Assembly (NCBI RefSeq): GCF_026571515.1
Contig: NW_026854037.1
Coordinates: 1 to 64,000, forward strand
DNA: 64,000 nt
Source of the DNA: Ruditapes philippinarum
Taxonomy: Eukaryota
Direction of reading: 5' to 3'
Shown: positions 10,138-54,264 of the stretch, in pieces
How the letters are laid out: each line of letters begins with the position of its first letter
Numbering within the stretch: position 1 is the stretch's first letter
Program-made: the position numbers and the translations under genes
The notes under the pieces: model-generated
Told to the model about the DNA's origin: nothing
Databases searched by the model: none
What the model saw: only the letters and a program-made list of their open reading frames with translations

Positions 10138-12629
10138 CAAAATTCAAGCACCTTGGTATTAAGTACCCCTTACAACACTCAAGTGCAAAGCTTTAATCAT
10201 ATACTGGCAATCGCAATAAGGTCAAAGGTACAATCAGGTTACAAGTAACCTGTAAGTAAACAAGCCACTATGCCTTTTACATTTTATGTTGTAGAAACTA
10301 CATCCTCATCCCTGTTTTCCCTGTTGTTTACTCATTGGATAGTCAGGAAATATCTCCTGAGACTGGCTACAAGCCCTCTATACTCGATGAATTTAAACAT
10401 GTCTTTGATGGCATTGGTTTAATGTCAGGTGAAGTAAAATTACATTTGAGGCCCGACTCTATACCAGTCGTAAACCCACCTCTGTCCCATTTTAAGACAA
10501 ACTACGAGAGGAACTTGATTGGAAAAGCTCGAAATAATTGACAAGATCAAAAATCCAACTGAATGGGTTAACAATCAAGTGATTGTAGAGAAACCCAAAA
10601 CTAAGAAACTTAGGGTATGTCTAGACCCCAAGGCACTCAATGAAGCCCTGTATAGACCTTTCGAAGAAGTCACTTCGCAACTTGCAGGTGCAAAGTTCTT
10701 CTCAGTACTTGACGCCACAAGTGGTTATTGGAGTGTGAAATTGGATGAAACTTCATCATTAACACACCATTTGGTAGGTATCGTTTTAAGCGATTACATT
10801 TTGGACTTATATGTTCACATGACATATTTCAACAGAAACTTGATGAAGCCTTTGAAAGATTACCAGGCGTTACTGGAATCGTTGACGACATTTTGGTATA
10901 TGGGCAGACAAAGGACGAACATGACTCAAATTTGAAACAAGTTTTTAAACGTTCATAGACATGTGGTGATAAATTCAATCCTGACAAATGTGTAATTAGA
11001 GTTACACAAGTGGCCTATTTTGGGTTATATTCTATCTGAAATTGGTTTGAAGCCCGATCTTCAAAAGATCAGTGCTATTACTGAAATGCAACCGCACAAT
11101 GATAAGGCTGAGCTACAAACATACTTAGGAATGTGTACGTACATGTCTAAATTTTCATCCAAATTAGCTGTGGTCACAGCCCCTATGTGTGCATTACTTA
11201 AGAAAGATGTAGAATTTGAGTGGAAAGGCATTTCAGGAGGTCAAATCTATTCTGTCATATGCCCTTGTTCTTGAATACTTTGATCATACGAAGCCAATTA
11301 TTATACAACGTGATGCTTCGGAGGATGTGCTAGGAAGCGTTTTATTCCGGGACAAAAAGCCCGTAGCCTTTGCTTTAAAAACCCTGACAAAAGCTGAAAT
11401 AAACTATTTAGAAAGAAATGTTAAGTAGAGTTTTTTCATGCAAGCGTTTTCATCAGTAAATATAGGTAATTGTAAATAATTACTGTAGAATCTGATCACA
11501 AGCCTATCTCATCTATTTGGAAAAAAAATCATTATGCAATGCAAGTCCAAGGTTACAACGAATGTTGTTACAGTTGAAGAAATATGATTTGAGTATTGTC
11601 CATGTCCCAGGCAAAGATATCCCTGTAGGAGACCCCTTGTCTCGAAAATCTTTGTCAGTAACATATCCTGAATTATCAGCAGATCTTTGTCTACATATGA
11701 ACACAGTGCTATCAAGCATAGCTGTAAGCGACTAAAAATTAGAACAGGTCAAGCAAGCAATTAGCAATGATTCACAATGTCAGTTGCTAACAGATACAAT
11801 AAGTGGTTGGCCGGAATCTAGAGCAAATTGTCCCGTCAAAATCGTAGATTTCTCGAATCACAGAGATGAATTGTCCGTGGGAAAAGACCTAATTTTCAGA
11901 GGTCAAAAATTACTCATACCTCTTTCACTTATACAGGAAATGATAAAGGCTATTCATGTAGGCCATATAGGCGTTGATAAATGCTTACAACGAGCCCGTG
12001 ATATAATGTTTTGGCCGAAAATGAGTTCCGATATTACCGACTATGTACTGAAATGTGATATTTGTTTGAAAAACATAAATTCAAACACTAAAGAGCCTTT
12101 AAAAAGTCACCCTATACCCGACAGACCATGGCAGGTAGTGGGCACAGACGTGTTCACATGGGAAAATGATGACTATTTAGTCACGGTTGACTATTTCAGT
12201 AGTTACTTTGAAGTTGACCTACTGACTAGCAGCAAAAGTGTTTCTATAATTAGAAAACTCAAGGTTATCTTTTCAAGGCATGGCATACCTGAAAAGTTGA
12301 TATCAGACAATGTTCCTTATTATGTAAGTGAAACGTTTAAGTCATTTGAAGTGACTGGAATTTTAGTCATGTGACAAGCAGTCCACTTTACAGTCAAAGT
12401 AATGGACTTGTAGAGAAAACAGTCCAAACAATAAAACGGCTATTTAGAAAAGCCAAAGAGAGTAAGACAGACCCTTACATGAGTATTTTAGAATACAGAA
12501 CAACCCCAATGAAAATCTCCATCACAACTATTATGAGCAGACGACTACGGACAATTTTGCCTATTAACAGTGAGTAACTTATGCCACAGAAAATTGACAT
12601 AAAAGATGTATGTATGAAACTTCAACAAG

Positions 12630-15698: not shown

Positions 15699-16310
15699 AT
15701 GTCTGAAGAGAGAACGTATTACATTAGAACTAGTGTTATGTACACAGACCTGACAAGAGAGTTGTTATGTAAAGTGTTCAAATATTTGATAAAAAGTGAT
15801 GACATCACAGACTTTCTCTCATCTCCAGAGCAGCAAAATATATTAAGGGATCTATTTCAAAAAAATGTCATAAACAGGTATGACTATGATCTGGTTCATG
15901 GTCAAGGTTTAAATCTAGAGAGATTCGATATTTCACTTTTGCTAAGACTTATACTAAATTTGTGTAAAGATAATATATCAAAACCACAGCGCGGTTGGCA
16001 AAATAAACCACACCCGAAAGACGAAAGTCTTGGTGCTGATCTTCTTCGATTGATAGATGTCAGAAACAAGATAATAGGTCATCGAGCGGATGCTAAATTG
16101 TCGAAGGCAGAATTTGAAAAGACTTGGGCAAAAATCAGAGGTATTTTGTTGAGAGTGGTTGAACTTGTTGACTCGACGGCTAGTGAAAACTGTGAACGAA
16201 GAATAAATGAATACAGACGACTAAATGTAGATACAGAGAATGCTGCAGTTAAGAGGTTACTGGATGAGTTGCTTAAATACAAAAAAGAATTTGATTACCT
16301 TCAAGAAAAG
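15699..16310 (+). CDS. Coding exon 1: DZIP3/hRUL138-like HEPN domain
   Basis: MSEERTYY...FDISLLLRLILNLC..PQRGW..PHPKDESLGADLLRL..RNKIIGH..LSKAEFEKTW fits the DZIP3-type HEPN pattern, with Rx5H at 16062-16082. Donor AAG|GTCAAT, phase 0. Confidence 0.88.
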
Positions 16311-16775
16311 GTCAATGCTTTTAAATTACGTTTTATTTCAGCAGTTACATATGTCTATCTCAAATATTCCAGTATTAAACATATAAATTCATTACAGTCG
16401 AATTTATTTTAATCCAAAATTAGCACTTATCAATTTTTATATATTTTTATGTAAGTCTAACATTGGGAGATAAACTTGTAGTCATATTTTCATACCCGTT
16501 ACTATACTTCTGATAGGCCTGCTAGCAACTGTTACACAAGTTAAGCACAATATCTTCAATCCGATAATCGTAGTTATGTGCTTAAGTACCTTCTATTTCA
16601 GGTTGAAGAATTGAGTAGAACATCAAAGGGTTAGTAGTATTTATAATTGTATTGTTGTGTTCATCTTATTACTATTTTCTTGCTGTTGTATAAAATAATA
16701 TTGACATGTACCATTTCTGTATTCATGTACTTAAAACTTTAAAGGTCTTTCATTTTTTCAATATCACAGGCTAAT

Positions 16776-16867
<92 letters not shown>

Positions 16868-19800
16868 TGAAATGATTAAGATTGATTGACATGTTATTGT
16901 AGAGTTTCAGGTTTTTTTCCAAAAAAACCCCGAGAGATTTGTACGTTTCATAAAACTTTTGTTCAACGGAGGGCGTATCGTGTTATGTGGAATACTGGAG
17001 AAGAAGTTGGGTGACCAAGACCTATCAAAATTTCTTGAAAAAAAGAAGGGAACGCTGACAAGAAATATTGGAGAGAAATTTTCCAGTTACCTATACCCAC
17101 ACGAGTCTTGTTCAGATTATAAAAACTGGGATATTTTTCTTCTGGCATCAGTTTTGCTGCTCACGTTTGATGATGACCTAAGTCAAAAGGAGATCATGTG
17201 TATCGGGCTAATAAAAAGTGCAAGGGTAAATTATGCTTCACTTGCCTTGCAGTCTCTAGATGCAGATGCCTTTCTGATCAGTTGGACTGACCTTATCATT
17301 TGCCTAAAACATCTTTCATTCAACATTGCTGAAGACGACAGACAACAAGTTGAACATCTTATTGAACTTTATAAGAAAAAAGGCGAAGCAGGATGTGACG
17401 TTGAGGAGTATTTTAAACAGCTAAGAGAATCTGGTGTTGAAGTGAAAACTTTAAACGATGTCTACAACGGTACATTTATTTATTTCTAAGAACGCATGTA
17501 TTGCTAGGTAACTAAGTATTTAAAAATAACAGCGAACACATTTATCTGCAATGTTTCTTAAACATTTATTTTATTAATGTGTGATAAATTTACAACGTTT
17601 TGTGAAAGTATATAATTACAATCCTTCTTTTTCCATAGAAACAATAACGGAATTGAGCGATATGCTGAACCAGTTGAGCCAAAAAGCTATCAAGTTTCAA
17701 CAAGAATATGGTAAGTATATAATCGATTAAGTGAAATAAGACATTAGATAAAAATTTAACAATGTCTGCAATTTTTATACATAATACGATTCCAATAATA
17801 GTGTTTTACAACACACATGTACATACATGTATATCATCGCAGTTCAGTTTTTCTTCTGTTTCCTTTCAGTTTTAAAATTTAAACTGCTGACAACATGTGA
17901 AAATGAAGAAATTAAGAAAAGAGCGGAGGACATACTCGAGATCAACACGCAAATACAAAAATCAGACCAACCGTCAGGTTCTCAAAGGAAAGAAATAGAC
18001 AAAGTACTAGCTTTCATTGCCACACATCCTGATGTACAACTTGTTGAAGCCTCCATACAAAATTTAGATCAACCGTCGAGGATTTCAACGATGAAATATA
18101 AATGTAAGTACAAATATATAAAACCATATTACACACATCGATTTATAGTCTGTTAAAGGAACTCATCAGAGGCCCATGATGCTTAAACATAATATTTGAA
18201 AAGCTTACATAGACCAATTGGTGCACTTTAAACAGGAAGATATGCAAAAGATAAACAGAAAAGACTCAGGAATTAATTGAAAATCGTATTTTGTGCTATT
18301 CTTACCCCGATTTGAGTGAAAAGCGTTGGAAGTCTTTTTTCAGTTTTGGGTCATTTTTTCACAATCAGAATAATTATTCTGAAAAAACGGAGTGAGTGAA
18401 TGATTTGCAATTTTGCACATAAAACATTAATGTAGACCTACATCTAGCCTGTGATTCGGGCGTTGATAGTTTTTGCTTATTTATAACATTTTCTTTGCTT
18501 ATAAGTTATTCATAACAGATGCGCTATTCCGTATTCGTTCGTGGTTTTGACAGTGTCGATTTGCAAAACCGAAGTACATAAAAAATCGACAGACTGGAAC
18601 CCAGGCTACTATAAGCGCAAAGTGTGCAAGAAGCCACCGCAACCTAATCTAAGTGGCCTTAGGCGTGTTGCGTTCGTTTTAAGTTGTGCTGAAATTTTGT
18701 TTAAAATTGCGAATTAAATGTTATTTTCTCCTACATTTATTTGTAGAATACGATACAAACAAAGATTGCCAATTAGGAATTTGCTGAAGTGTTTTGTAAT
18801 GTTATTATTATTTAGCTTTGATTTATATTTAATTGCAAGACGATCACGTGCTTTTAAACGTCTTTTTAAATGGCTATAACTACATGTATTCGTAACTACA
18901 TGTATATGTAACACATATGTGTCACAAAAGCTTCGCTCAAGCTTCGCTTTTACTTTTTGTGAGAAAGCTATCCAGCTACTTTACGGCCGTGAAACATCGG
19001 AGGTTCTACTCAGGTGCCCATTCGTAACTTTAATAACGCATTGCAGAGTACTTGACGTCTTCCTCCATCAGTTAAACAGAAAAGTCGCAGTATGACCTTT
19101 ACTGTGTCGGTTTGACGTAGAACCCAATTAAAAAAATCAGACAAATGCTTCACTTTCTCGCTTTTCCTGCTAGTTAACATTGTGAGTAACATGCCATTAA
19201 TTTAGATTATATATTGTTCTCGAAAAGAATTTACTTTGATTCGTAAGTCAAATGTAGGTGATCTTTATACAGACTTTGTCGTAAGATTATTCCATTAGTG
19301 TTGTCTACAACCTTTAATCATTATAAAAGCTTTTCCAATTGTATTATCGATGGAAATCCTAGAATAAGATTTCATCCGCAATTGCAAGCTTTAAGTTTTT
19401 AACAGAACAAAAAACCTCTTTATCTGTAATTTCGAAACTTATTAATAAGTGGTTACTGTTTAAATATAGCTCACCTTAATGGTAAGTGTTATTCTAAGAC
19501 ACACTGAAGTGGTAACATTTATAATACAGCATATTTTTGTGGTTATTGTTTTCATACAACATACTTTAGTTGTCACTGTTTTCATACAACACACTTAAGT
19601 GGTTATCGTTTTCATACAGCATACTTCAGTGGTTACTATTTTCATACAGCCCTATTTAGTTGTTACTGTTTTCCTACAGCAAACTTTAGTGGTTACTGTT
19701 TTTATACAGGACACTTTAGAGGTTACTGTTTTCATGCTACACACTTCAGTGATAACTCTTTTCTTACAGCACACTTGAGTGGTTATTGTTTCCATACAGC

Positions 19801-22800
19801 ACACTTTATTGGCCAATGTTTTATACAACATACTTTTCTGGTTACTGTTTCAATACAACACACTTGAGTGGCTACTATTTTCATACAGCGTACCTTATGG
19901 TTACTGTTATATGAAAACAATAAGGACAAGTTGTTACTTTTTCATGCTTCACGCTTGAGTGATTACTCTTTTCGTACAGCACAATTGAGTGATTACTGTT
20001 TTCATACAACAGACTTTATTAGTTAAAGTTTTCATACAAAACACTTAAGTTGTTACTGTTTTCATACAACACACTTAAGTGGTTATTTTTTTCATATAGC
20101 ACATTTTTTCATACAGCACACTTTAATTGTTACTTTTTTTAATACAACACGTTTGAGTGGTTACTGTTTTCATACTGCACACTTGTGTGGTTACTGTTTC
20201 CACACAGCACACTTTAGTGGTTACTGTTTTTAATACAACACACTTCGCTGGTTGCTGTTTTCATACTGCACACTGTAGTGGTTATTGTCTTCATGCAGCA
20301 CACTTAAGTAGTTACTATTTTCATACATCACACTCGAGTGTTTACTGTTTTCATACAACACTTTAGTGGTTACTGTTTTCATACAACACACTTTAGTTGT
20401 AAACAGTACTGATTTCATACAGCGCACTTAAGTGGTTATTGTTTTCAAACAACACACTTGAGTGGTTATTGTTTTCATACAGCACATTTTAGTGGTTATT
20501 GATTTCGTACAGCACATTTCAGTGGTTACAGTTTTCTCACACCACGTTAATGGTTACTGTTTTCAAACTGCACACTGTAGTGGCTTTTGTCTTCATACAA
20601 CACACTTTAGTGGTTACTCATTGTCAGGAGAAATGACTGCCTTGATGTTATTAAATCTAAGGAAAGATTCAGTAATAAATATTGGAACCAATTTCCAAGA
20701 TATGGGGGCTGGCCAGCACCGCCTGACATAAAATTGAAATATTCTCAGTGGGAAAACTAGCATGTAATTGTTTAGTTAATACTATTTTTTAGGTATTTTT
20801 ATCTTTTCTATCTCAAATCAATATAAACATTTAAACAACAAACTCTGATCATTATTTACACCCAAAACAAACACACATCATTAATCAGCCACTTATACGA
20901 AATATCTTTTCACGTATACGTCTTTTATACAGTAACACAAATATGAATATTTTTACAACTGTAAGATACAGTATAAACCACAAACATTCATCCAACAATA
21001 TTAACTTCACACAATATAATCAGCATCAGAAAACAACTTAAACTAAAGCACCCAATATTTACATATATCCTCAAAACAAAGCCTCAACTAATATAATCTT
21101 GACCAGACAAACATTTAACCAATATCAACCAATTATATCTTCACAAACAGATATAACTCAACAACCAAAACAACTAATTACAACCAATAAACCCTGATCA
21201 CCACAATTATATTCAACCACTTCAACAAACCAACAAAACTCCCTTCAAAACAACAAAATTCTCTTCACAATAAAAAAATAACCGCTACACACTATCAGCG
21301 TGTCTCTCCACACCTATTCAAGTTATTTAGATAAGCTAAATAAATTGGCCTTTCAACATTTTTTCAGGCACAATTTTTACTGAAATGTCTCATTAAGATA
21401 GCCCAGAATTTATACCTTTGTCTTTGCAAGACTATCATGTTTCTGTAAAATATGTGAAAAAAAGCGGGAAAATGATGCATTTAGCTAAAACACAATGGAG
21501 TAAATGAAATGCGTTCATTCTTTTTTAAAATTGAAAAAATGTGACAAAAATTTATTTGATGCAAATTCTTTATTCGATGAAAGTTATTCACTAAATGAAC
21601 AAGATCATTTTTAAATCCATTTTGACTCTACTTGAAAAAGAGCTCTTTTTCATTTTTTTTACAATGTATTTATTTATTTTTTTTTTGCCCTTCTGTGTAT
21701 CAGCGTATTGATTTGTTCCTTTGACCAAGACATTGTAATCATTTACTGAAATTCAAAGGGCATGTACACTGAATCAACAACAAAAAGTCAGAAAATAATA
21801 AAAATAACAGCACTATCAAACCTTCGGGCACATGTTTTGTGTCAAACTGGTGTTATCAGTGTCTTGGCAGCCAAAAACTTGTAGAAAAATAGAACGTGTT
21901 CTAACTTTCTTGCAAGGAATTATCTTCTTGGATGTCACATAATTTCTTTTTAAAACTCATTCAAGTAGGGTGTCTACACTATTCAATACAAGAGAATATG
22001 ATACTTGCATTCAAGACTTGGATAGGTGTAGACGGGCCCTAACTGAAGTAAAATCTCTCTCAAAACGTGCATATTTGCTAGCTTAAACGATATGACCTTT
22101 ACACATGTATACATACAGCGAACCCTGATATTTACACTCTATTTAAAACAATGTATCACTGTAAAGAAATATTAACTCGTTGTTTCATCTACAGCAATAT
22201 TTATCACTGTAGGGAAATATTAACTCGTTGTAAGATACAGATCTACATATAAACTTCATGATTATTCTGACACCCATTTCATACAGTACACTTGCGGGGT
22301 TAAAGTTTTCATACAACACACTAAAGTGGTGACTGTTTTCATACAGCACACTTTAGTGATTATTATTTTCATACAGCATATTTTAGTGGTTATTGTTTTC
22401 ATACAGCACACTTCAGTGGTTACTGTTTTCTCACACCACGTTAATGGTTACTGTTTTCAAACAGCACACTAAAGCTGTGACTGTTTTACTACAGCACACT
22501 TTTTTGGATACTTTTTTTATACGACACATTTTTGTGGTTAATACTTTCTATACAACACACATTAGTGATTATTTTTTGCTACACACTTGAGTGATAACTC
22601 TGCAGCACATTTTTCATTCAGCACACTTTAGTGGTTACTGTTATCATACAACACACCACATTGGTTACTGTTTTGATACTGCACACTGTAGAGGTTATGT
22701 TCTCCATGCAGCACACTTACGTGGTTACTGTTTTCATACAGCATACTTCAGTGGTTATAGTTTTCATGCAGCAATCTTAAATATTCACTGTGGTCTTAAA

Positions 22801-24948
22801 ACACTTTTAAGTGGTTACTATTTTCATACATCATACTTTTATGGTTACCGTTTTCATACAACACACGTGAGTGGTTACTGTTTTTATACAACACTCTTTA
22901 GTGGTGACTGTTTTCCTGCAGCACACTTAAGTGGTTACTGTTTTCATAGGGGACACTTTAGTTGTCACTCTTTTCATACAACACACTTAAGTGGTTACTT
23001 TTTTCATACATTACACTTGAGGGGTTACTCTTTTAATACAGCACACTTTAGTGGTTACTGTTCTCATACAAGAAACTTGAGTGGAAAGTGTTTCCATACA
23101 GCATACTTTAGTAGTTACTGATTTCATACAACACACTTTAGTTGTAACTGTTTTCATACAACCCTCTTAATAGGTAAATGTTTTCAAACAACACACTAAA
23201 TAGGTTACATTTTTCATACAGTACACTTGAGTTGTAATTGTTTTCATACAATACACTTTAGTGGTAACTGTTTTCATACAACACATTTAAATGCTTATTA
23301 TTTCATACAACACACTTAAGAGTTAACTGTCTTCACACTGCACACTTTATTGGTTACTGTTTCCATACAGCATACTTAAGTGGTTACTGTTTTCATACAA
23401 AACACTTGAGTTGTTACTGTTTTCATACAACACACTTAAGTGGTTATTGTTTACATAAAGCACATTTTTTAAGTTAGTATTTTCTTACAGCACATTTTAG
23501 TTGTTCCTTTTTTAATACAGAACACTTTAGTGGTTATTGTTATCATACAACACACTTAAGTGTTTACTGTTTTCATCCAACACAATTAAATAGTACTTGT
23601 TTTCATACAACACACTTTCGTGGTTATTGTTTTCGTACAACACACTTAAGTGGTTACATTATTCATACAACAAACTTGAGTGGTAACTATTTTCATATAG
23701 AACACTTCAGTAGTTACTGTTTTCAGACAGCACACTTTAATGGCTACTGTTTTCTCACACTACAGTTTAGTAGTTATTGTTTTCATACAGCACACTTAAG
23801 TTGTTACAGTTGTTATACAGCACACTTGAGTGATTATGTTTTCATACAGCACACTAAATAATTATGTAACTGTATTCATACAGTATTCTTCAGGGTTTTT
23901 TCCATACTGTACACTTTAGTGGTAACTGTTTTCATACATCACACTTTAGAGTTAACTGTCATCATACTGCATACTTTAGTAGTTATTATTTTCATATAGC
24001 ACACTTTATTGGTTATTGTTTTCATACAACAGACATTAGTATACTTTGGACCGCATTTAAGGAGACACAGGCAAAATGTCTTACTTTTTAATTTTCATTC
24101 ATTTCTCCGTAAATGTCCTCAAAATGAATACATAAGACAGTCAAAAGGATCAAATTTTTCTCCATATAAAGAATAAAATGGTGATTTTCTAACTTGACCC
24201 GCGTGGATCAGGTGAGATCGATTAGAGTGAAGTCTGGAAACGTTAAAGAACATGTCAAATGAATGACATAGACTTGTTTCAATCATACAATATCCACACT
24301 ATCTGTTATTGTAACTAAAAGGGTTTGTTTAAGTCACATGACTTGTTTACAAACTATTTGGTGATTGTGTTTGCGTTTAAATTTCGTTCAACTAATATAG
24401 GTATATATTTACGATCCAAACTATATCGAATTTATACCAACATACATGCTGGGACTTAAAGGAATGTCATTTTAGCGTGGTTTGACTTAATAAGATCATT
24501 TTAATATTTTTGTCATTATTTGCCAGAATATCCCTTTATAATTAAGATTTGTTTGTGATTGAAGTATTTACACATTTTAATCAGAAAAATCTTTTTCACT
24601 GTAACTTTTTTATTTCTTAAGGTATTTACTTCAAAATTGAATTATTTGCTTCTGATCATCAACCACATCATATGTGACAAGGTTCACAAATAGGGCAACA
24701 GAATTGTTAGAACTTACCCCTCCCGCTTGAAATTAGAGCTGTCATGAAACAATTCTTTTATGACTTCTTTATTCTTAATTATCTACTTCAAACTTCGCAT
24801 AATTATATGTTTCGTATCATCACCCACAACATATATGTGGCAAGGTTCATAATTCAATCACCTATATTTCAGAATTATCTTCCTTTGTCTTAGAAATTTC
24901 AAGAAAAAAAGTTGTTTGCTTGTTATCATTTCTTTCTTTCTTTCTTTT

Positions 24949-34000: not shown

Positions 34001-37000
34001 CTGCTTGCCATGGGAACCATAAATGGCAACCAAAAGAATCAAAATAACTTTTTAAGCCTTTTCATACAAAAACCAAGGGTTAGAGTTTAGGTATTTAGCA
34101 TGAAACTTCACGCAGTAAGCGTGTACCACGTTTGATTAAATTATAGCTCCTTGGGTAAAAATTGTTCCCACCCAAGGGCGTTATCAGTTTCGCATGTTTG
34201 TAGTGATAAATATCTCCTCTGAACCACAATGTCTAGATCTAATATATTTGGCATAGAACATAAGCTTATGGACATCTTCTAAGTTTTTGCAAACCATATC
34301 CGTGGGGTTATAATTGCTCCCGGTAATGTCATTGAATTTAGTTAATATAAATATAGAAAATAATGAAAATACTTTTCTCTGAAATTAAGATATATGGCGT
34401 GAATGTTGGCTTATTACGTTTGAAATAATACCTCTGTGGTCTGACCGGAGAATATGGGACATGTACTAAGACATTTGACATAAAATTTGTTTAGTCATCT
34501 TCCACCAAGTTTGTTTAAATTACAGCGTTGGGATCTGATAGGTTACCCCCCGGGGTGGTTGTAATCATGGGTTTTTCGAACCAAGGGCCATGCTTCAGTT
34601 AAAATCTATAAAAGATTGAATGGCTTTGAAAAGTGATCTGCAAATTAAACTATGATCCCCACAGACATTATGCTACTTACTTTATCTCATTTCTCTACAG
34701 ATGAGCTGCCCGAAGAGATTCGGCAAATGGATGATAGATCTATACAAATCTTTACAAAAGCGTTACAGGAAGGAAAGGTCCCAGTTCGAAACATTCGAGT
34801 TATGGTAGTGGGTCATTATGAAGTTGGGAAATCAACACTTACAAAACGCCTTTTGGGCATGCCAGTTGATATAACAATAAGAAAGCCAACAGAAGGTATA
34901 GATGTACACACAGACAGATGTAGACGCTTGGAGGATGGAACATGGATGTTGCCCAAATCAGGTAAATTTTGAAAGGACAGATATTCATATGATATTTGAT
35001 CTTGATTAAAACTCTTTTGCAAAACATTTGCATTACCTATAATTTTACCACAGTTTTTACTAGGAAAAGTAATCTCCGATGGAAAAGTAGGTCTCAGGAG
35101 AAAGAAAAAACTCTTGAAAACATTCGTTGTCTAAATATCCTTGAACTTAGTTAGAGAGGTTATTAAGATAAATTATAGCTCAAGTTGGAACATGGGTTAC
35201 ATGGCGTCAAAACCTAGGTAACACAGCAACACTATGGAAACGCCTTGTTAATACACTTAAGGTAATTGTTTTGGTTCAAATATCACAGAAATTAGTCAGA
35301 AATCTTGTTTTGAGGATTTTAAGGTCAAGTCTGCATATGTGTTATCTGGGGTAAAAAATAAATCAAACAGCTCAAATTTGAAAGAAAAACAACTAATTAA
35401 CACTATAAAGACTACCATTTGGGTTTCAATATTCCGGAAATTTGTCGCAAAATGTGTATATGATTTCTAGCTCAAGATCGCTTCACTATTAGTCACCTTG
35501 GTAAACACTTGGTAACACAGCACAAATGTTGAAAAAGCTTAAACTGTTCAGGTTTAATTTTCAGCCAAATTGGGTCTGTAATTTGATGATTTCAAGGTAA
35601 GTTAGAATATTGGTCATCTAGGATCCTAAAATAGGTCACGCAGTCCAAATATTTAAAACAACGTTAACACTTTAAAGGCTAATGTTTGAATCTAAAATTC
35701 CTTTTAAATTTGTCAGAAATGTTGTTCAGATGATTACAAGCTAAAATTCGAATATTGGCCACAAAGCCTTGTTAACACTCTACAGGAACCATTTTAAGCC
35801 GAAATATCCTGTACATTTGTCTGAAAGATTGTTTACACGATTTCTGGGTATGGAACAACTAGGGTCAAAAACAAGGTCTCACAGCTGAAATGAGGAAGCA
35901 CCCTGTTAACACTCTAGAAGTAACATTTTAAAGAGAGACACAGGCAAAATTTTCATTTCTTAGTTTTGAATTTTTCATTCATTATTCTGTAAATGCCCTC
36001 AAAATGAATATATTAGACAGCCAAAAGAACAAAACTTTTCTTCATATAAAGAATGAAATGGTGGTTTCCTAACTTGACCCGCGTGGGTCAGGTTAGAGCG
36101 CTAGCTTTTCACAATAGTTGTCAAAGTGAACTCTGGAAATGTTAAAGAACATGTAAAATGAATGACTTAAGCTTGTTCTAATCATACAATGAATGTTATT
36201 GTAACTTTTAGGGTTTGTTCAAGTCGCCTGACTTGTTTTAAAACTATTTTGTGATTCTATTGGCGTCTAAATTGTGTGCAACATATATAAATATATTTAC
36301 GCTTAAAACCAAAAATATATAGAATTTAAACAGAAATCCATGCTGAAACTTCAAGAAAAGTTATTTTAGCGTGATTTGAGTACATAAGATCATTTAAATA
36401 TTTTTGTCATTATTTTGCCTAAATATCCCTTTGAGTATATCTTGGAAATTGGTCAAAAATTTTGTTTTTGTGAATTCTAGCTCAAGTTCGGATATGGTTT
36501 ATCTGGGGTCATAAACTACGTCACAGAGCCCAAATATAGAAATGCTGTTTTTATGATTTCTAGTGAAACTGAAAATATGGGTCACCGTAGGTGTTAAAGT
36601 AGGTCACTCAACGCCCAAGAATGGAAACTATTTGTTAGCACTCTCAAATAATTATTTTCACCTGTTTCGCCTTTTGCGTCTATAAGTCTTTGACTGACAA
36701 TGACTTTAAACAGATGACTGCTTTGTGGATTAAATATTTGCAAATATTTTTTTCTGAACTTGTTTTTAAATATAAAGGCAATATTTTGAATGACATAAGT
36801 AGAAATTTATCTTCACATTTATACGCCGAAATCACTTGTGTACACAGTCCAATCATTCTGGTGACAAACATGACTCTTTGCTGGGTTCATTACCTCACAA
36901 TAATTACACTTAAATCCCTCCTTTTTGGTATACACCTAGTGATAATATAGCCGAAATAAAAATTACCTACTTCTCTGACTGCTAATTGTTCGCCATGTTC

Positions 37001-49000: not shown

Positions 49001-52000
49001 CAAGTCATGTCAGTGTGCAACAGAAAAAAGTTGAAGATACAAAAATAAACTCCTCAGTACGTACAGGTAAGATTTAAGCAGATTATTTTCTGAACATTCT
49101 TGAAAAGAAGGGCTATCATTTTACATTATGTTAAACATGATTAATGAAAGTTCTTCTTAAGTTTATAAATCAGTGTAAAATTAAGGGTTGCAGTAAAAGC
49201 TTACAAAATTTTTTAGTTTGAAGGAATAAATGATTCTCACATGCAATAATTTATAAAAAGGAATACTTATATAATTCATTAATACTATTTTCAGATTTTG
49301 CTTTGACAATTACAATAAGATTCGAATTTGTATCGATAATTGTACATGGACACTGTATTATACTGATGTAATTTAATGAATATTTAGAGTTTTGACATTG
49401 ATAACGATGCATGTTTCCTTGCGAAAAAATCAAGATATCCATAGAGAACATTACGTTGAAACTCTAAAAATGTTTTATGGACTAACAACTGATCAACTTG
49501 TGAACAATAATTCGTGGTCAAGACTTTGCATACTAGTGTTTCTCCAAAACAACTTATGATTCTTTTCGAATGCCACATGTAATTTCAGAGCCGTTCCTTA
49601 GGTCACTGGCTCATAAATGTAATTTTGTAACAAAATAGAGAAAAACAGAATCCCTAAAGAAAGTGCAACATGGCAAGATTAAAAATGTTCTAATGAAATC
49701 ATTGAAAAACTTATGCGTCCCTTTTGCTTTTAGTCTTCATTAAAGATAATCTTAATATTTTACTGTTTATTTTTTAAGAAATGACAAATCAGGACTTTAC
49801 AAAGAAAGAAGGCGAGACAACTAAAGCTAAAGAAAAAAGGAATGACAAATTGAAGGTTAAAATATTTTAATCTCGACTTTTTTGAAGGAAAAAGAGGTAT
49901 TGTAACAGTCATGGCGGTCTTCCCGTTTTCCTCTGCAAACATTAACCTTGATCACAACTTTGAAAGTTCTTAATGCATTGTCTTCAAACTTGGCCACAAC
50001 AACCCCTGGGACAAGGCTTTTAAAAGAACAAGACTTAACTTGGGCTTTATTCATACATTCATAGCTTTTTTACTGTTTTTTTGCTATAATTAGCTATAAC
50101 GTTGGTGCTTTTTTCTGAATGGATGTCTCCTAACTTGAACACAAAACTCGTTTATGATAGATTTTCAAGTTAACCAGACAGACATTGACAATCGGTCATA
50201 ATTACCTTGACCTCGATGGTCTGATTATTGAATGTCTTTGTTTAACGAGCTATAACTTAGTTATTTATGAATCAATTGACCTCATATTAAAATATAACAT
50301 TCTTTAGGTTAAAACCTTCATGTATTGGTCTTCAGATTGACCTTGACTCATTCATGACCACGATCTTGAATGTTATTTATTTTTGCTATAATTGACCGTA
50401 ACTTAGTAATTAATCAATTAATTATCGTTATTCTTAAACAGCCTTTTGGACAAGGCCTTTTTAAACGTTGTACTGGCCTTGACCATGAACTTAAAACGAC
50501 ATTGAGTGTCCAGGTAAAATATTTGATTCTTTGCTGAATTTTCATATTTTTATGTACATGTACGTTTGTTTTTAAAATTCGACAATATAAGATGTTTTAC
50601 AAAATAAATATAATGAAAAAATATTAGAATATTACAATATAAATATTACAATTAAGATGTGACCGTCAAGGTTAAATTGATAAAATTATCTTGTTTTTCC
50701 ACTGTAATTGGCTATAAATGTGTTATTTATAAATAGAAAAACTTCATAAACATATCAACTTTTAGGTAAGGGTTTTCATGTATAAAGCTATAATTGACCA
50801 TGCTTCTTGTATGACTTTGACCTTGACGGTCAAAATATTGAATTTTATACTGATCATTGCTATAATTGACTGTAACTTTGTCATTTATCATTTGATTATC
50901 TTCATTGCTGCACAAAAAATCTTTTTGAAAAGACCTTTTAAAAGGTTAAAGTGCCCTTGACATTGACGACCAAGGTCAAATAATGGAGTTTTGGCTAAGT
51001 TGTCATAATTCTATTATTTATGTAAGACTTGATTCATACGAGGTCAAAACAAGACTTTTGACCAAACGGACATGTTGAATAATTTAGATATGACATTGAC
51101 CTGTAAATGACCTTTACCGTCAAGATCAGTCCTTTTAAGATAGAAAAAACATAATTCTTTCTATCTTTTCTTTGAAAGATTTGTTAAAACCATTTTTTTT
51201 TCGCTTTTTGAAAAAAAAGGAAAAAAATGTCCAGCATTACCCCGCCAAGAGGTGACTTTTTTTAGCAGAAATTTATAAATACTTAATAAAGAAGTTATTA
51301 AGAAATAGATCCGCTTACCAGTCCTTAAGGACAACATTTTTTCTGCAAGTATGAAATTTAACATGAACCATTGACTTTACACATCGTATCACTTATTCCG
51401 ACATCAGTGGCATATAAGGAAATAAAATAAAGTTTACAAATTTGCGGTGTTGCCTTGATGACCTGTACAAAATTTATTAAAATCATGCCACTTAGACCAA
51501 TATTGGTCTAACCGCAGGTGTAACTTTTTATACCCCCTAAAAAAAGAAGTTTAAGGGGTATACTGTAGTCAGCTAGTAGTATATTGGTCCAACCGCAGAG
51601 ATAACTTTATATACCTCCGAAAAAAGAAGTTAAAGGGGGTATACTGTAGACAGCTAGTGATCGGTCGGTCTTGTCCGGGACATAACTCAGGATGTACAAG
51701 AGATATCAACTTAAAGAACCATTACTCTGTATTGCTTAATTTAAGAGTTATTGCCCTTTGTTCATTTTTATACTTTGAAAATTGTTTTGGACATTACTCT
51801 TGAAACCACAATTGGTATTAACAAGAAACTTTGTAGGTAGACAGATCTCATTGAGGAAAATTGCAGTACAATAAAACTGTAACTCTGCCTTGTGTAATTT
51901 TCGAGTAATTGCCCTGTGTTCATTTTTATACTCAGTTTTTTCCGTGGAATAAATCTGAAACTTCAACAAGAAACTTTGCAGGTAGATAGATCTTATTGAG

Positions 52001-54264
52001 TAGAAGTGCGGTGCATTATAAACGTAACTTTGCCTTCCCAACTTTTGGAGTTACTGTCCTTTGTTCATTTTAACACTATGAACTTTGTCTGGGACATAAC
52101 TATAAAAGGTATCAACTTAAAACTGTAGGTAAATCGATCTCATTAAGTAGAAGAGCACTGAATAAAAACGAACTGTAAGCCTCTCATCCTAAGTTTTGAA
52201 GTTATTGCCTTTTGTTATTTTTTACACTTTGAACTTTGTCCGGGACCTAACATGTGAACTATAAAGAATATCAACTTGTAACGTTGAAGGTAGATACATC
52301 TGAATGATAAAAGGTGCAGTGCCCTCCCTTTCCCTAATTTTTGAGTTCTTGCCCTTCGTTCGTTTATCACTTAGTCCAAATCCAAACTTTGATTTATCTT
52401 ATTGGTGCAATAATTTAAAAACATTTGACATTTAAGAAAAACTCTATAAACTACTGCATCATCCTTGTGTGAAAAAATATTAACTAACTAAATAACTATT
52501 CTGACAAGCACGTGTAGTGGGTATTCGGCACTTCGTTACAATTTCAGTTTTTATAGATGTTTATCTGATTTGAAACTACAATATCAAGAACTGTTTGACT
52601 TGCAACATTTAGATTCTGCTTGTGGACCTTAACTGATGTAAATTTTTAATCATGCCCACTGCGTCAGTATTTGGCTTGCGCTAGGGGACTCTTAATTTAT
52701 ATAGACAAACATTTAAATATTCCTGTGTGAACTCATATTGCTACTTGGGTCAATATTTGGCTCGCCGCCGGAGTCACTTAATTTAGAATTCTGATATAAA
52801 AAATAAACATGTAAGTGTGAAACAATTTCCAGAAGAATCAATTTGTAGATTTAAACAAAATACTTTTATCAGGACTCTCAAGTAAAAATTGTCTCTGTCC
52901 CTGGAGTTACTTGATTTTAGGTTTTTTCCGATGTCAAGGTGGCCTTTGCCACTTTTTGTGCTCCTAGACATATTCCGGCAAACAATCGTCGCTTCATCCA
53001 TTTTTCCGTAGATCTATTACCTATTTTATATTTTGAACATAAGTACCTTCGATACCAATTATTGTCCACTTTGTCATCGGCTGGATTAATGTCAGTGCCA
53101 TCGATGCATCAAAACAACAATATTGCAATTAAGTCACTACATTCGTCATTAAAATACATTGACAAACAGGCCGGTGCTGGTAGAGCCCATTTATTGTTAG
53201 TGGTATTCTTTTGAAAGATATATGTTGGGTCACTTTTAGTTTAATGCTAGAAAAGTGCAGATTATATCATAAAAAATCATCATTTATGTGCACTGTTTGT
53301 CATTGTAATCGTATTTTTTACCATTAACCTTATCTTTTTGTGTAGATGTTGATGGAGGAAGTACTACAGAATGAAGAAAAGGGTGCTGTAAATGTGTCTA
53401 TATGGGATTTTGCTGGACAGGATATGTTTTATTCAACCCATCAGGTTTTTCTTTGCAAACGCGCTGTCTATTTGCTTATAACCGATATATCTAAATATAT
53501 AAAAGAAAACGTAAAAGACCATTGGAGTGAAGAAGAAAGCACAGAGCGCCAGGTTTCAGGTTAGTTAATGTTTTTTAAACAAAGTTAACATCAAATTAAA
53601 AGTACGAATTAATTACAACTTTCTTTAGAAAAGAAACCAATGCATTAAGACAGGTTCAAGGGTCGAGACTTGCAAAAAACTTGATACTTGTAAAAGTAAC
53701 ACTTAGGTCAATATCTTTGCACAATTATAACCAGACAACTAAAGTTCAATCTTTTGTATGTGTTCAACAAATTCAAACAATCTTTTATTAAAATTATGCC
53801 TTTAATTTTTTATGATTAGTGGTGAGCATTTGTGATCATAAACTGTTTCTCGTCAGTCTTTCATTATTATTCGAAAATTATTAGTTTCATTTATTCTTTA
53901 TTTAACAGAAATGAGCCTTTGTTTAACTTCTGAAATATTATATAAACCAATAAAAGGTTAACAAGAGCTACAAATAGACACTACAAATGAAATATTTATC
54001 AATACTCTTCTTAGTTACTACATTGGCCATACTGAAATATTTGTCATGTAATTTAATGTTACTTGGTCTCTACTTAAGATTTATGATTTTCGCTCCTTGG
54101 ATATATTTTTTCCCGCCATTAATCGATCAGAGTATAGTAAACATACTTACATTTTAGAATACATTGACTTTTGGCTGAATTCAATCCACCATTATTGCGG
54201 TTACTCTGAGAAAAATGGACCTCCTGTTGTTTTGGTTTGTACCTTTGCAGACAAGTTACCAAAG
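15699..54264 (+). CDS. Spliced gene, 3'-partial: tandem DZIP3-like HEPN domains fused to a Roc (ROCO/LRRK-type) GTPase, at least 856 aa
   Basis: Exons 15699-16310, 16602-16629, 16903-17469, 17639-17710, 17870-18103, 34701-34961, 37857-37916, 40346-40411, 42384-42455, 43778-43837, 46961-47026, 48995-49066, 49779-49855, 53346-53559, 54158-54264. All introns are GT-AG, phases are compatible, and the 2568 nt stay open. The link across 18103-34701 is inferred from phase only. Confidence 0.72.
16602..16629 (+). CDS. Coding micro-exon 2 (VEELSRTSK)
   Basis: TTTCAG acceptor and G|GTTAGT donor. Its 28 nt bridge phase 0 to phase 1, as exon 3 requires. Confidence 0.75.
16784..16864. repeat. (CT)n microsatellite
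   Basis: Pure CT run of about 80 bp in an intron. Confidence 0.98.
16903..17469 (+). CDS. Coding exon 3: second, degenerate HEPN-like domain
   Basis: DLSKFL..YLYP..WDIFLLASVLL..IKSARVNYAS..LDADAF..SWTDL parallels exon 1. TAG acceptor and G|GTACAT donor, phase 1-1. Confidence 0.8.
17639..17710 (+). CDS. Coding exon 4 (ETITELSDMLNQLSQKAIKFQQEY)
   Basis: Pyrimidine tract plus TAG acceptor and G|GTAAGT donor; 72 nt, phase 1-1, open. Confidence 0.82.
17870..18103 (+). CDS. Coding exon 5 (helical linker VLKFKLLTTCENEE...HPDVQLVEAS...)
   Basis: Strong TTTCCTTTCAG acceptor, in frame with ORF 17827-18156. The T|GTAAGT donor gives phase 1. The 3' boundary is less certain. Confidence 0.7.
18960..19137 (+). 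mobile_element. SINE-like body fragment of a second family (related pieces at ~30340-30530 on - and ~46598-46715 on +)
   Basis: Shared motif GAGAAAGCTATCCAGCTA...TCGG(A/T)GGTTC...TTCCTCCA.CAGT and an A-rich end. No tRNA-like head seen. Confidence 0.55.
19445..24040. repeat. 30-bp minisatellite array in two blocks (19445-20620 and 22278-24040)
   Basis: Diverged tandem units close to GTGGTTACTGTTTTCATACAGCACACTTTA. Confidence 0.95.
20622..22272. mobile_element. 1.65 kb insertion splitting the minisatellite (TGT...ACA ends)
   Basis: Begins TGTCAGGAGAA and ends TTATTCTGACA, a short inverted terminus. Flanks CTCAT and CCCAT form a possible 5-bp TSD with one mismatch. Contains a C/A-rich low-complexity tract at ~20850-21290. 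Confidence 0.55.
24060..24535 (+). mobile_element. TTAA-associated MITE (Kolobok-like), copy 1
   Basis: Clearly homologous to 35932-36430. Imperfect TIR AGGAGACACAGGCAAAAT / ATTTGCCAGAATATCCCT, with TTAA at the left flank. Confidence 0.65.
24549..25684 (+). repeat. Tandem duplication with ~590 bp period, including (TTTC)n and a TRIM LTR
   Basis: TTGTTTGTGATTGAAGT.TTTACAC starts at 24549 and again at 25138. The copies stay colinear through GGTCAGGCTGCACATTTT. Confidence 0.9.
25561..25908 (+). mobile_element. TRIM (miniature LTR retrotransposon) with tRNA-like LTRs, Helenus-like
   Basis: LTR1 ends GTGACA at 25697. A tRNA-Lys-type PBS TGGCGCCCAACGTGAGG follows at 25700-25716, then a PPT AGCAGGGGAG at 25793-25802. 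LTR2 starts TGTCAC at 25805 and is 3'-truncated. The LTR holds an A box TAGCTCAGTC(G)G and a B box GGTTCGAGTCC. Confidence 0.85.
26330..27920 (+). repeat. Diverged tandem core repeats of a HINE-like family (relatives at ~33800-34560, ~38450-39230 and 57889-59100)
   Basis: Recurrent CTCTACCAAGATTGTTCAAATTAT..CCCTGGGGTCAAAATTGGC..GCCC motifs at roughly 150-180 bp spacing. Confidence 0.7.
28963..31586. mobile_element. Non-autonomous DNA transposon with ~470-520 bp TIRs, CAC...GTG ends and a 5-bp TSD
   Basis: 28963-29430 is a diverged reverse complement of 31065-31586. Ends are CACCGTACGGAACGTGTTACAGTA and TACTGTAACACGTTCCCTACAGTG. ATTGT flanks both sides (28958-28962 and 31587-31591). Confidence 0.85.
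32060..33430 (+). mobile_element. HINE-like element with ~150-bp tandem core repeats
   Basis: GGGGATATAG followed by a (GTCC)n-like microsatellite, then repeated GAGATATCAAC(T/A)TGAAACTTCATAGGTGGATAGATCT...GAGTTATTGCC units. Confidence 0.7.
34701..34961 (+). CDS. Coding exon 6: Roc GTPase N-terminal part (G1 and G2)
   Basis: LPEEIRQMD..FTKALQEGKVPVRNIRVMVVGHYEVGKSTL..PTEGIDV. P-loop GxxxxGKS at 34811-34834 and Roc switch-I TxGID. CTACAG acceptor and G|GTAAAT donor. Confidence 0.93.
35100..36620 (+). repeat. Diverged ~150-bp tandem repeat interrupted by a MITE
   Basis: Recurrent GGT(C/T)ATCTGGGGTCAAAAACTAGGTCAC..CTTGTTAACACT-like units. Confidence 0.6.
35932..36430 (+). mobile_element. TTAA-associated MITE (Kolobok-like), copy 2
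   Basis: TTAA|AGAGAGACACAGGCAAAAT...ATTTTGCCTAAATATCCCT|TTGA; homologous to 24060-24535. Confidence 0.65.
37857..37916 (+). CDS. Roc-insert micro-exon A1 (GKERFNVLGQLANILEENTT)
   Basis: TTTAG acceptor and ACAG|GTAAAT donor; 60 nt, phase 1-1, open. Confidence 0.72.
39245..40040 (+). mobile_element. HINE-like element with tandem cores (duplicated at ~45510-46440)
   Basis: GGGGATAG plus a (GTCC/GTCT)n microsatellite, then repeated TTTCGTGTCCGCTCCATAAC..CTTGGCACAAATGATCACCAT..GTCAAGGTCA units. Confidence 0.65.
40346..40411 (+). CDS. Roc-insert micro-exon B1 (DDNIAQMMQTEVTESIYTRNPT)
   Basis: CAG acceptor with a weak pyrimidine tract and ACAG|GTATGT donor; 66 nt, phase 1-1, open. Confidence 0.62.
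42384..42455 (+). CDS. Roc-insert micro-exon C1 (VDPSHVSVQQKKNEDTEINSSVRT)
   Basis: TACAG acceptor with a weak tract and ACAG|GTAAGA donor; 72 nt, phase 1-1, open. Confidence 0.62.
43778..43837 (+). CDS. Roc-insert micro-exon A2 (GKERFNVVGQLANILEENTT)
   Basis: Duplicate of A1 with intact splice sites. Confidence 0.68.
44513..44860. mobile_element. 348-bp TTAA-specific MITE (Kolobok-like), present only in duplication copy 2
   Basis: TTAA TSD at 44509-44512 and 44861-44864. TIR AGTGTCATTATGCTCAT / ATGGGCATAATGTCACT. Copy 1 has the empty site ATTATCCTTAAGAAGTCC at ~38581-38598. Confidence 0.92.
46961..47026 (+). CDS. Roc-insert micro-exon B2 (DDDVAQMMQTEVTESIYTRNPT)
   Basis: Duplicate of B1 with intact splice sites. 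Confidence 0.62.
48995..49066 (+). CDS. Roc-insert micro-exon C2 (DDPSHVSVQQKKVEDTKINSSVRT)
   Basis: Duplicate of C1 with intact splice sites. Confidence 0.62.
49779..49855 (+). CDS. Roc-insert exon D (EMTNQDFTKKEGETTKAKEKRNDKLK)
   Basis: TTTTTTAAG acceptor and AAG|GTTAAA donor. Its 77 nt convert phase 1 to phase 0, which the exon at 53346 requires. Confidence 0.68.
50050..51125. repeat. Highly diverged tandem repeat region
   Basis: Recurrent GACCTTGAC..GGTC and TTGCTATAATTGAC.GTAACTT motifs. Confidence 0.5.
51525..52550 (+). mobile_element. HINE-like element with a duplicated 5' end; related to 32060-33430
   Basis: TATACCCCC..GGGGTATACTGTAG hairpin present twice (~51530 and ~51610), a GGTC microsatellite and AACTTTGTAGGTAGATAGATCT..GAGTTATTGCCCTTTG cores. 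Confidence 0.65.
53346..53559 (+). CDS. Roc GTPase exon with G3
   Basis: VSIWDFAGQDMFYSTHQVFLCKRAVYLLITDIS is the Roc WDFAGQxxFYxTHxxFL signature. TGTAG acceptor and G|GTTAGT donor. Confidence 0.95.
54158..54264 (+). CDS. Roc GTPase exon with G4
   Basis: EYIDFWLNSIHHYC..PPVVLVCTFADKL matches the Roc pattern (F/Y)WL.SI...PVILVGTHxD. TTTTAG acceptor and AAG|GTATGT donor. Confidence 0.92.

What the first reader, a model, noticed from the sequence alone, without database searches (positions are those of the whole stretch)
36987..49855. Frame-neutral micro-exon cassette inside the GTPase fold, doubled by tandem duplication
Seen: between Roc G2 (exon 34701-34961) and G3 (exon 53346) lie six exons of 60, 66, 72, 60, 66 and 72 nt. 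Each is a multiple of 3, phase 1-1, and ends ACA-G|GT. A 77-nt phase-converting exon follows, for about 158 inserted aa. The A-B-C triplet is repeated because the whole 6-6.7 kb block is duplicated. Both sets keep splice sites and open frames, with several amino-acid changes (A: L/V; B: NI/DV; C: V/D, N/V, E/K). Inference: any subset can be skipped or combined without frameshift (up to 64 combinations). This would give an expandable, probably disordered loop between switch I and switch II, possibly a diversifying sensor or bait region. The shared exon ends suggest A, B and C came from older duplications.
Basis: partly seen in the sequence, partly recalled or inferred. Interest (0 to 1): 0.78.

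Follow-up and report, generated by a model that had tools for sequence, protein, structure and literature searches.

The report
Doubled mini-exon block in clam GTPase
A Manila clam immune-type GTPase gene carries a long floppy loop inside its GTP-binding domain, built from small in-frame exons; a 6-kb tandem duplication has doubled three of them and the messenger RNA includes both sets, an ordinary way for a loop to grow.

Summary
All have AG..GT borders in phase 1, inside a clean tandem duplication (36987-42968 | 42969-49671). RNA contigs of run X9 show GT..AG joints A1->B1, B1->C1 and C1->A2. X9 and X10 link the G1/G2 exon to A1. A DNA contig of X4 bridges the junction. The public RefSeq protein XP_060582317.1 (LOC132738745, Ruditapes philippinarum; P0205) matches the window's exons at 100% and holds all seven peptides in order. 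The gene model is therefore already public.

The gene is a HEPN_DZIP3-Roc-COR (ROCO) protein of a large bivalve family. In that family the Roc domain always carries a long insert between strands beta2 and beta3: 103-388 aa from P-loop to DxxGQ, about 227 here. AlphaFold gives pLDDT under 50 for most of the insert.

Not supported:
- Combinatorial skipping. Only full inclusion was seen, and one isoform is annotated.
- Origin of A, B and C from each other. A and B match different conserved family motifs.

The duplicated exons diverge as fast as the introns.

Verdict: a real tandem exon-block duplication that lengthens a disordered loop. Modest interest.

The parts
15699..16313 (+). First coding exon of the gene (start codon at 15699): HEPN_DZIP3 domain with an R-x4-H motif (RNKIIGH)
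   Evidence: tblastn of P0205 residues 1-205, 100% identical; Pfam PF18738 E 1.2e-21
16605..16628 (+). Core of a very small exon (peptide EELSRTSK, P0205 206-213); exact borders not set
   Evidence: exact peptide match
16902..17474 (+). Second large N-terminal exon (P0205 214-404), no Pfam match
34701..34961 (+). Roc exon with G1 (GHYEVGKS) and G2/beta2 (TEGIDV); enters and leaves in phase 1
   Evidence: its 3' end is the loose end spliced to A1 in X9 and X10
36987..42968 (+). Copy 1 of the tandem duplication (5982 nt)
37857..37916 (+). Exon A1, 60 nt, phase 1-1; amphipathic helix KERFNVLGQLANILEENTT, the conserved first helix of the family insert
   Evidence: (joints)
40346..40411 (+). Exon B1, 66 nt, phase 1-1; carries the family motif E-x-I-Y-x-R
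42384..42455 (+). Exon C1, 72 nt, phase 1-1
42969..49671 (+). Copy 2 of the tandem duplication (6703 nt)
   Evidence: DNA contig of X4 covers 42776-43294 across the junction
43778..43837 (+). Exon A2, 60 nt, phase 1-1
   Evidence: joint 42455->43778 in X9; P0205 658-677
46961..47026 (+). Exon B2, 66 nt, phase 1-1
   Evidence: sequence and 100% match to P0205 677-699; no reads laid here
48995..49066 (+). Exon C2, 72 nt, phase 1-1
   Evidence: no reads laid here
49779..49855 (+). 77-nt exon, phase 1 to 0; its second half starts the helix that leads into beta3
   Evidence: no reads laid here
53346..53552 (+). Roc exon with beta3 and G3 (WDFAGQ)
54130..54264 (+). Next Roc exon (FWLNSIH...VLVCTFADKL, G4 region); borders approximate. 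The COR exons lie beyond the window
   Evidence: in the paralog the next exon lies about 18 kb further on

Best explanation
This is the expressed Manila clam gene LOC132738745, a ROCO protein with the architecture HEPN_DZIP3 - helical region - Roc - COR.

As in the whole bivalve subfamily, the Roc G domain is interrupted in the beta2-beta3 (interswitch) link by a long polar insert. The insert opens with a conserved amphipathic helix and closes with a helix that leads into beta3. In this gene the insert is encoded by phase-1 symmetric mini-exons A, B and C plus a 77-nt exon that brings the frame back to phase 0.

A recent 6-kb tandem duplication, with a breakpoint of 1-2 nt microhomology and no repeat at the ends, copied the A-B-C block. 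All three exons are phase 1-1 and the splice sites were copied with them. The spliceosome therefore includes both blocks, and the protein gains 66 residues in a loop that tolerates length change.

Shown: the exons, the duplication, splicing from the G1/G2 exon through A1, B1, C1 to A2, and the position of the insert in the fold.
From the public model only: A2 through B2, C2 and the 77-nt exon to G3.
Inferred: that the extra block is tolerated or nearly neutral, and that it doubles two short conserved elements (helix A and the E-x-I-Y-x-R motif) that may be docking sites.
For: - Exons and phases.
- Duplication and junction.
- RNA joints and the DNA contig across the junction.
- Public protein XP_060582317.1 (P0205), 100% identical to the window's exons, with A1-B1-C1-A2-B2-C2-E77 at residues 592-749.
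- Pfam HEPN_DZIP3, Roc and COR-A in P0205.
- Family trait: 59 of 153 family proteins carry both motifs, with P-loop-to-DxxGQ distances of 103-388 aa, median 176. About 185 aa replace 9-11 aa of solved Roc domains.
- Helix motif in 56 of 106 inserts (shuffles 0.1) and E.[IVL]Y.R in 20 of 106 (shuffles 0.3).
- AlphaFold2 on P0205 501-920 with 50 aligned sequences: Roc core pLDDT 80-92, pLDDT under 50 for residues 612-709 and 711-733, helix over A1.
- A collinear paralog on G000:C7142 has the block once, with A, B, C (75 nt, one extra in-frame codon) and the 77-nt exon all intact.
- Paralog C3402 (P0203) keeps the same intron phases, with a 168-nt 1-1 exon and a 119-nt 1-to-0 exon.
- Seven of 106 family inserts, this one included, hold an internal tandem repeat.
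Against: - The joints A2->B2, B2->C2, C2->E77 and E77->G3 were not seen in reads. They rest on an automatic RefSeq model that may have been built on the same assembly.
- X9 and X10 are only guessed to be RNA, though spliced GT..AG joints show cDNA in X9. Both also cover introns at depth about 15-25.
- The raw RNA run X21 (about 4% read) had no reads on the exons, so expression is not general.
- Near-neutrality rests on few sites: 9 differences in 198 nt between copies; 16 non-synonymous and 5 synonymous differences against the paralog.
- Whether C7142 is a paralog or a very divergent second haplotype is open.
Confidence: 0.8

Rival explanations
1. Combinatorial cassette. The six phase 1-1 exons are alternatively included, so that one gene makes many loop variants as a diversifying sensor or bait.
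For: - All six exons are symmetric, so any skipping keeps the frame.
- Insert exons B, C and E77 evolve at dN/dS about 1.2, against 0.30 for the Roc core.
- Inserts of 7 of 106 relatives hold internal repeats.
- The family belongs to bivalve immune-type expansions.
- Brown-algal ROCO genes do splice symmetric 72-bp LRR exons alternatively (PMC11378527, passages read).
Against: - Only the full-inclusion chain was seen among the listed joints.
- One public protein without an isoform label, and a cluster of one.
- dN/dS near 1, together with exon divergence equal to intron divergence between the copies (0.955 against 0.959), fits relaxed constraint as well as diversifying selection.
Confidence: 0.12
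2. The second block is only partly used. After A2 the transcript skips to the 77-nt exon or uses other sites, and the public model is wrong for B2 and C2.
For: No reads were laid on 43846-53552. B2 and C2 are known only from the sequence and from the automatic model.
Against: - B2 and C2 keep the same acceptor and donor contexts as B1 and C1, which are spliced.
- The flanks are 95.6% identical between the copies.
- The model contains both exons at 100% identity.
Confidence: 0.06
3. Assembly artefact: two haplotypes of one block were placed in tandem.
For: The genome is highly polymorphic. A collinear copy at 85-90% identity lies on another contig.
Against: - An RNA contig splices C1 to A2, so the two copies are in cis (X9, side 53, depth 48).
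- A 516-nt DNA contig of run X4, from another study, covers 42776-43294.
- There is no N in the window.
- The junction is clean.
Confidence: 0.02

Closest known systems
ROCO proteins (Roc-COR GTPases: LRRK2, bacterial and archaeal Roco; PDB 6oje, 4wnr)
   Same: - Roc G domain with P-loop and DxxGQ, followed by COR-A.
- Best PDB matches are Roco and LRRK2 Roc domains.
   Different: - About 185 residues replace the 9-11 residue beta2-beta3 link.
- There is an N-terminal DZIP3-like HEPN domain instead of LRR, ankyrin or kinase domains.
- I found no paper on such an insert. Search 42 looked for Roc domain, insertion, switch and interswitch terms; search 37 looked for ROCO and bivalve terms. For both I saw listings and abstracts only.
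Bivalve expansions of DZIP3-like HEPN, Death, TIR and CARD proteins
   Same: - Relatives come from Sinanodonta, Potamilus, Mercenaria and Ruditapes and pair Roc-COR with HEPN_DZIP3, Death, CARD, TIR or OTU domains.
- The pearl-oyster paper reports large HEPN_DZIP3 families with copy-number differences between haplotypes (PMC9646362, passages read).
   Different: - In the passages I read, that paper deals with NACHT and HEPN genes, not with Roc inserts or exon structure.
[quoted passage not shown]
   Same: ROCO genes in which tandem symmetric 72-bp exons are duplicated, proposed there to diversify candidate immune receptors (passages read).
   Different: - There the exons encode LRR repeats outside the G domain, are in phase 2 and are shown to be alternatively spliced.
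- Here the exons lie inside the Roc fold, are in phase 1 and encode a disordered loop; only full inclusion was seen.
Tandem exon duplication in general (mutually exclusive exons as in Dscam; repeat-exon growth in modular proteins). Recalled, no call.
   Same: Adjacent duplicated exons of equal length and phase.
   Different: The duplicates are included together, not mutually exclusively (C1->A2 joint). A block of three different exons was copied, not one exon.

Membership tests
ROCO (Roc-COR) GTPases | Ras-like Roc G domain with P-loop (G1) and DxxG (G3) | tested here: met
   GHYEVGKS and WDFAGQ are present. Pfam Roc matches the G3 exon at E 2.2e-11 and P0205 at E 5.6e-16. The G1/G2 exon alone scores below the Pfam cut-off (21 against 27 bits).
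ROCO (Roc-COR) GTPases | COR domain directly after Roc | tested here: met
   COR-A at P0205 918-1044, E 7.7e-10. These exons lie outside the 64-kb window.
ROCO (Roc-COR) GTPases | GTP binding and hydrolysis | not testable with these tools
   No assay was possible. The G4 region reads CTFADK where the family consensus is GTHxDK.
DZIP3/hRUL138-like HEPN proteins | HEPN_DZIP3 domain with an R-x4-6-H motif | tested here: met
   PF18738 at E 1.2e-21; RNKIIGH is in the first exon.
Alternatively spliced cassette exons | Both inclusion and skipping forms observed | tested here: inconclusive
   Only inclusion joints appear among the 15 listed (9 were not shown). Contigs drop rare forms, and the raw RNA run had no cover.
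Mutually exclusive duplicated exons | Only one of the duplicated exons is present in a transcript | tested here: not met
   The joint C1->A2 puts both copies in one RNA. P0205 holds both sets.
Microexons in the strict sense (about 3-27 nt, at most 51 nt; definition recalled) | Exon length at most 27-51 nt | tested here: not met
   The exons are 60, 66 and 72 nt. A truly tiny exon of about 24-27 nt lies elsewhere in the gene, at 16605-16628.

The most novel reading that the evidence does not exclude
The interswitch insert of this bivalve ROCO family is a modular, evolvable surface. Its phase-1 exons would be gained, lost, duplicated and perhaps alternatively spliced, changing the number of helix-A and E-x-I-Y-x-R elements shown next to the nucleotide switch. 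Loop length or motif number would then tune partner binding, or act as a decoy for pathogen factors. Copy number (one block on C7142, two here) would vary among haplotypes.
Probability: 0.1. Interest if true: 0.7.

Novelty: new variant of a known kind. Interest (0 to 1): 0.35.

Why it matters
The case gives a clean, RNA-backed example of how a symmetric exon block can be doubled and at once included in an mRNA. The loop it lengthens sits between the two switch regions of a G domain.

A whole bivalve ROCO family also carries a 100-390 residue insert at a site that is only about ten residues long in LRRK2 and bacterial Roco proteins. If that loop binds partners or is phosphorylated, it would be a new regulatory input to Roc-COR switches in invertebrate immunity.

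As it stands, the gene model is already public, the mechanism is a textbook one, and the attractive part (combinatorial isoforms) has no evidence.

Tried and rejected
- **G3-exon protein search.** It returned 3 short proteins among 3 candidates, and none reached into neighbouring exons.
- **Insert search with P0205.** Residues 586-760, length range 700-2228 aa, found only P0205 itself among 720 candidates. No second model, isoform or paralog product with this insert is in that collection at that length.
- **Raw RNA run X21.** About 4% of the run was read. It gave reads only on dispersed repeats (39250-40049, 41450-41649, 43050-43449) and none on the exons, so it says nothing on splicing.
- **The X4 joint '43845 goes back to 37927'.** It is not a rearrangement. 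The stretch ended at 43845, and the next bases of copy 2 are about 96% identical to 37927 onward in copy 1.
- **BLAST self-comparison for internal repeats.** It reported 0 of 106, which was an artefact: it missed even P0205. I replaced it with an offset-identity scan with shuffles.
- **Older duplication of A, B and C.** Rejected. No self-similarity was found. A and B match different conserved family elements. In paralog C3402 the A-like and B-like parts share one 168-nt exon.
- **A selection signal between the two copies.** None was found: 9 differences in 198 nt (6 non-synonymous, 2 synonymous, 1 in a split codon), and 0.955 identity against 0.959 for the introns.
- **Supplementary files.** None were opened. 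Those of PMC9646362 and PMC11378527 may list domain architectures or isoforms that bear on the family claims.
- **Papers.** For PMC8195603, PMC6337361, PMC6320773 and the LRRK2 structure papers I saw only the search listing and the start of the abstract.


Full report
**What is in the sequence**

The window is AT-rich (about 32% G+C) and has no N. A mechanical scan for AG|exon|GT units of 60, 66 or 72 nt that end in ACAG and are open in phase 1 returns exactly six:
- A1 37857-37916
- B1 40346-40411
- C1 42384-42455
- A2 43778-43837
- B2 46961-47026
- C2 48995-49066

The 77-nt exon is 49779-49855. The upstream Roc exon 34701-34961 carries the P-loop GHYEVGKS and the G2/beta2 segment TEGIDV, and ends one base into a codon. 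The downstream exon starts at 53346 in phase 0 and carries WDFAGQ. Direct joining of these two exons would shift the frame. The 77-nt exon (phase 1 to 0) restores it, and the six small exons are phase 1-1.

**The duplication**

Self-comparison gives five collinear segments that pair 36987-42970 with 42969-49672, at 87.5-94.5% identity with indels. A three-way alignment gives 95.9% identity over aligned columns. Copy 2 starts at the base after copy 1 ends. The three breakpoints share only 1-2 nt, and no repeat sits at the ends. This is a simple tandem duplication of about 6 kb.

**RNA and DNA evidence (the single read-laying run, on 37850-43845)**

- Contigs of run X9 show GT..AG joints 37916->40346 (depth 76), 40411->42384 (depth 60) and 42455->43778 (depth 48, with 53 letters on the shorter side).
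- In X9 and X10 the letters before 37855 read the 3' end of the G1/G2 exon.
- The chain G1/G2 exon - A1 - B1 - C1 - A2 therefore exists in RNA, and the two copies are transcribed in cis.
- X9 and X10 are only guessed to be RNA and also cover introns, but spliced joints show cDNA.
- The raw RNA run X21 (about 4% read) had no reads on the exons.
- A 516-nt contig of the DNA run X4 covers 42776-43294, across the junction.
- No skipping joint is among the 15 listed; 9 more were not shown.
- The X4 joint '43845 back to 37927' is an effect of the stretch's end.

**The gene is already annotated**

I compared each exon peptide separately with the inserts of 106 family proteins. All seven match one protein, P0205, at 100% and in the order A1, B1, C1, A2, B2, C2, E77.
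- P0205 is XP_060582317.1, 'uncharacterized protein LOC132738745 [Ruditapes philippinarum]', 1273 aa, and the only member of its 90% cluster.
- Its other exons match the window at 99.5-100%.
- Pfam finds HEPN_DZIP3 (36-154), Roc and COR-A (918-1044).
- The COR exons lie beyond the window.
- The joints after A2 rest on this automatic model, not on reads I saw.
- A search with its insert (residues 586-760) found only itself among 720 candidates of 700-2228 aa.

**The insert is a family trait**

- A search with the G1/G2 exon found 257 proteins at E up to 0.001.
- Named relatives come from Sinanodonta, Potamilus, Mercenaria and Ruditapes, and pair Roc-COR with HEPN_DZIP3, Death, CARD, TIR, OTU or SH3 domains.
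- In the 59 of 153 proteins that carry both motifs, the P-loop-to-DxxGQ distance is 103-388 aa, median 176. Here it is about 227 by my count on the sequence printed.
- Against solved structures, P0205 573/574 and 759/763 align to residues 78 and 89 of 4wnr_A and to 60 and 69 of the LRRK2 Roc domain 6oje_A. About 185 residues therefore replace a 9-11 residue beta2-beta3 link.
- The insert has conserved parts. A helix motif ([RQ]L[AVN]x[ILVM][LMF]) occurs in 56 of 106 inserts (shuffles 0.1) and corresponds to exon A. E.[IVL]Y.R occurs in 20 of 106 (shuffles 0.3) and corresponds to exon B.
- A and B are thus different old elements, not copies of each other.

**Structure**

AlphaFold2 was run on P0205 501-920 with a 50-sequence alignment (mean pLDDT 66.6, pTM 0.61).
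- The Roc core is modelled at pLDDT 80-92.
- A helix covers A1 (593-610, block pLDDT 63-67).
- A helix at 734-758 (end of the 77-nt exon and start of the G3 exon) leads into beta3.
- pLDDT is under 50 for 612-709 and 711-733, that is B1, C1, A2, B2, C2 and the start of the 77-nt exon.

'Probably disordered' is supported as a prediction.

**Relatives in the same genome**

- The G1/G2 exon has 15 matches in G000: itself, one at 95% on contig C7142, and the rest at 60% or less.
- C7142 is collinear with the window from about 14 kb to 64 kb at 80-94% identity.
- C7142 holds the block once, with A, B, C (75 nt, one extra in-frame codon) and the 77-nt exon all open with AG/GT.
- Both window copies are equally far from it: at the sites where the copies differ, it agrees with copy 1 at 107 and with copy 2 at 99. 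The duplication is therefore younger than that split.
- Whether C7142 is a paralog or a very divergent haplotype is open.
- The more distant paralog on C3402 (the gene of P0203) encodes its insert in a 168-nt phase 1-1 exon plus a 119-nt phase 1-to-0 exon, and its G3 exon starts in phase 0. The intron phases are old, but the split into A, B and C is not universal.
- Many other relatives are single open frames of about 800 aa.

**Selection**

- Between the two copies the exons differ at 9 of 198 nt (6 non-synonymous, 2 synonymous, 1 in a split codon). That is 0.955 identity, against 0.959 for the rest of the block.
- Against C7142 the exons are slightly better kept: 0.924 and 0.899, against 0.874 and 0.871.
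- dN/dS against C7142 is 0.78 for the insert exons (A 0.13; B, C and E77 together 1.2), 0.30 for the Roc core and 0.53 for the HEPN exons. The counts are small.
- This fits a loop with one constrained helix and otherwise weak constraint. It does not prove diversifying selection.

**Recurrence**

Seven of 106 family inserts, this one included, have a 20-aa window with at least 11 identities at some offset. The periods are 16-66 aa, and one of the seven is low-complexity. Internal duplication of the insert has therefore happened more than once in the family.

**Literature**

- One search (ROCO, COR domain, bivalve, mollusc, death domain, HEPN) and one search (Roc domain, insertion, switch I, switch II, interswitch, Roco) turned up no paper on an interswitch insert in molluscan Roc domains. 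I saw listings and abstract starts only.
- Passages of PMC9334734 describe Roc-COR domains joined to TIR and Death proteins in Aplysia.
- Passages of PMC9646362 describe HEPN_DZIP3 expansions and haplotype copy-number differences in a pearl oyster.
- Passages of PMC11378527 describe symmetric 72-bp LRR exons, exon shuffling and alternative splicing in brown-algal ROCO genes. This is the nearest published parallel.

**Verdict**

The thing is a real, expressed tandem duplication of a three-exon block. The exons are phase 1-1, so both blocks are included, which lengthens a predicted disordered loop in the interswitch region of a Roc G domain. The gene model is public and the mechanism is classical. 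The combinatorial-isoform and bait ideas remain untested.

Noticed in passing
window 19446-20626 and 22268-24047: Two long arrays of a degenerate minisatellite lie in the intron between the N-terminal exons and the Roc exon. Self-hit offsets are multiples of about 30 nt at 71-79% identity. The arrays give a spurious 176-aa open frame (22591-23121). The same array is about 7 kb long in the collinear contig C7142 (146-153 kb).
   Followed up: partly
G000:C7142:136052-181249: A collinear copy of the whole gene region at 80-94% identity, with the A-B-C block present once and all checked exons open. Its HEPN exons are only 78-83% identical in protein. It is either a paralog or a very divergent second haplotype; this was not resolved.
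   Followed up: partly
window 39250-40057: A dispersed repeat with internal units of about 150 nt. It has dozens of copies in the genome, reaches depth up to 775 in the DNA contigs and is read in the RNA run X21. A second high-copy piece lies at 41489-41531.
   Followed up: no
window 16605-16628: A very small exon (peptide EELSRTSK, about 24-27 nt) of the same gene, between the two large N-terminal exons. It is known only from the public protein.
   Followed up: partly
window 10519-12374, with 4001-6000: Retroelement remains upstream of the gene. The open frame 11784-12374 has an integrase zinc-binding domain (PF17921, E 3.5e-15) and a weak rve core. The piece at 4001-6000 stands out at 49% G+C and has no Pfam match.
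   Followed up: partly
window 484-1226 and 1601-2346: A direct repeat of about 745 nt at 98.9% identity, 1117 nt apart. It may be a pair of LTRs or a local duplication.
   Followed up: no
window 16783-16864: A perfect hexanucleotide tandem repeat of about 80 nt in the intron after the first exon.
   Followed up: no
G000:C3402:2572-22491 (-): The gene of P0203, named RIG-I-like by RefSeq, joins helicase-type domains to a Roc domain with the same kind of insert. The insert is encoded there by a 168-nt and a 119-nt exon.
   Followed up: partly
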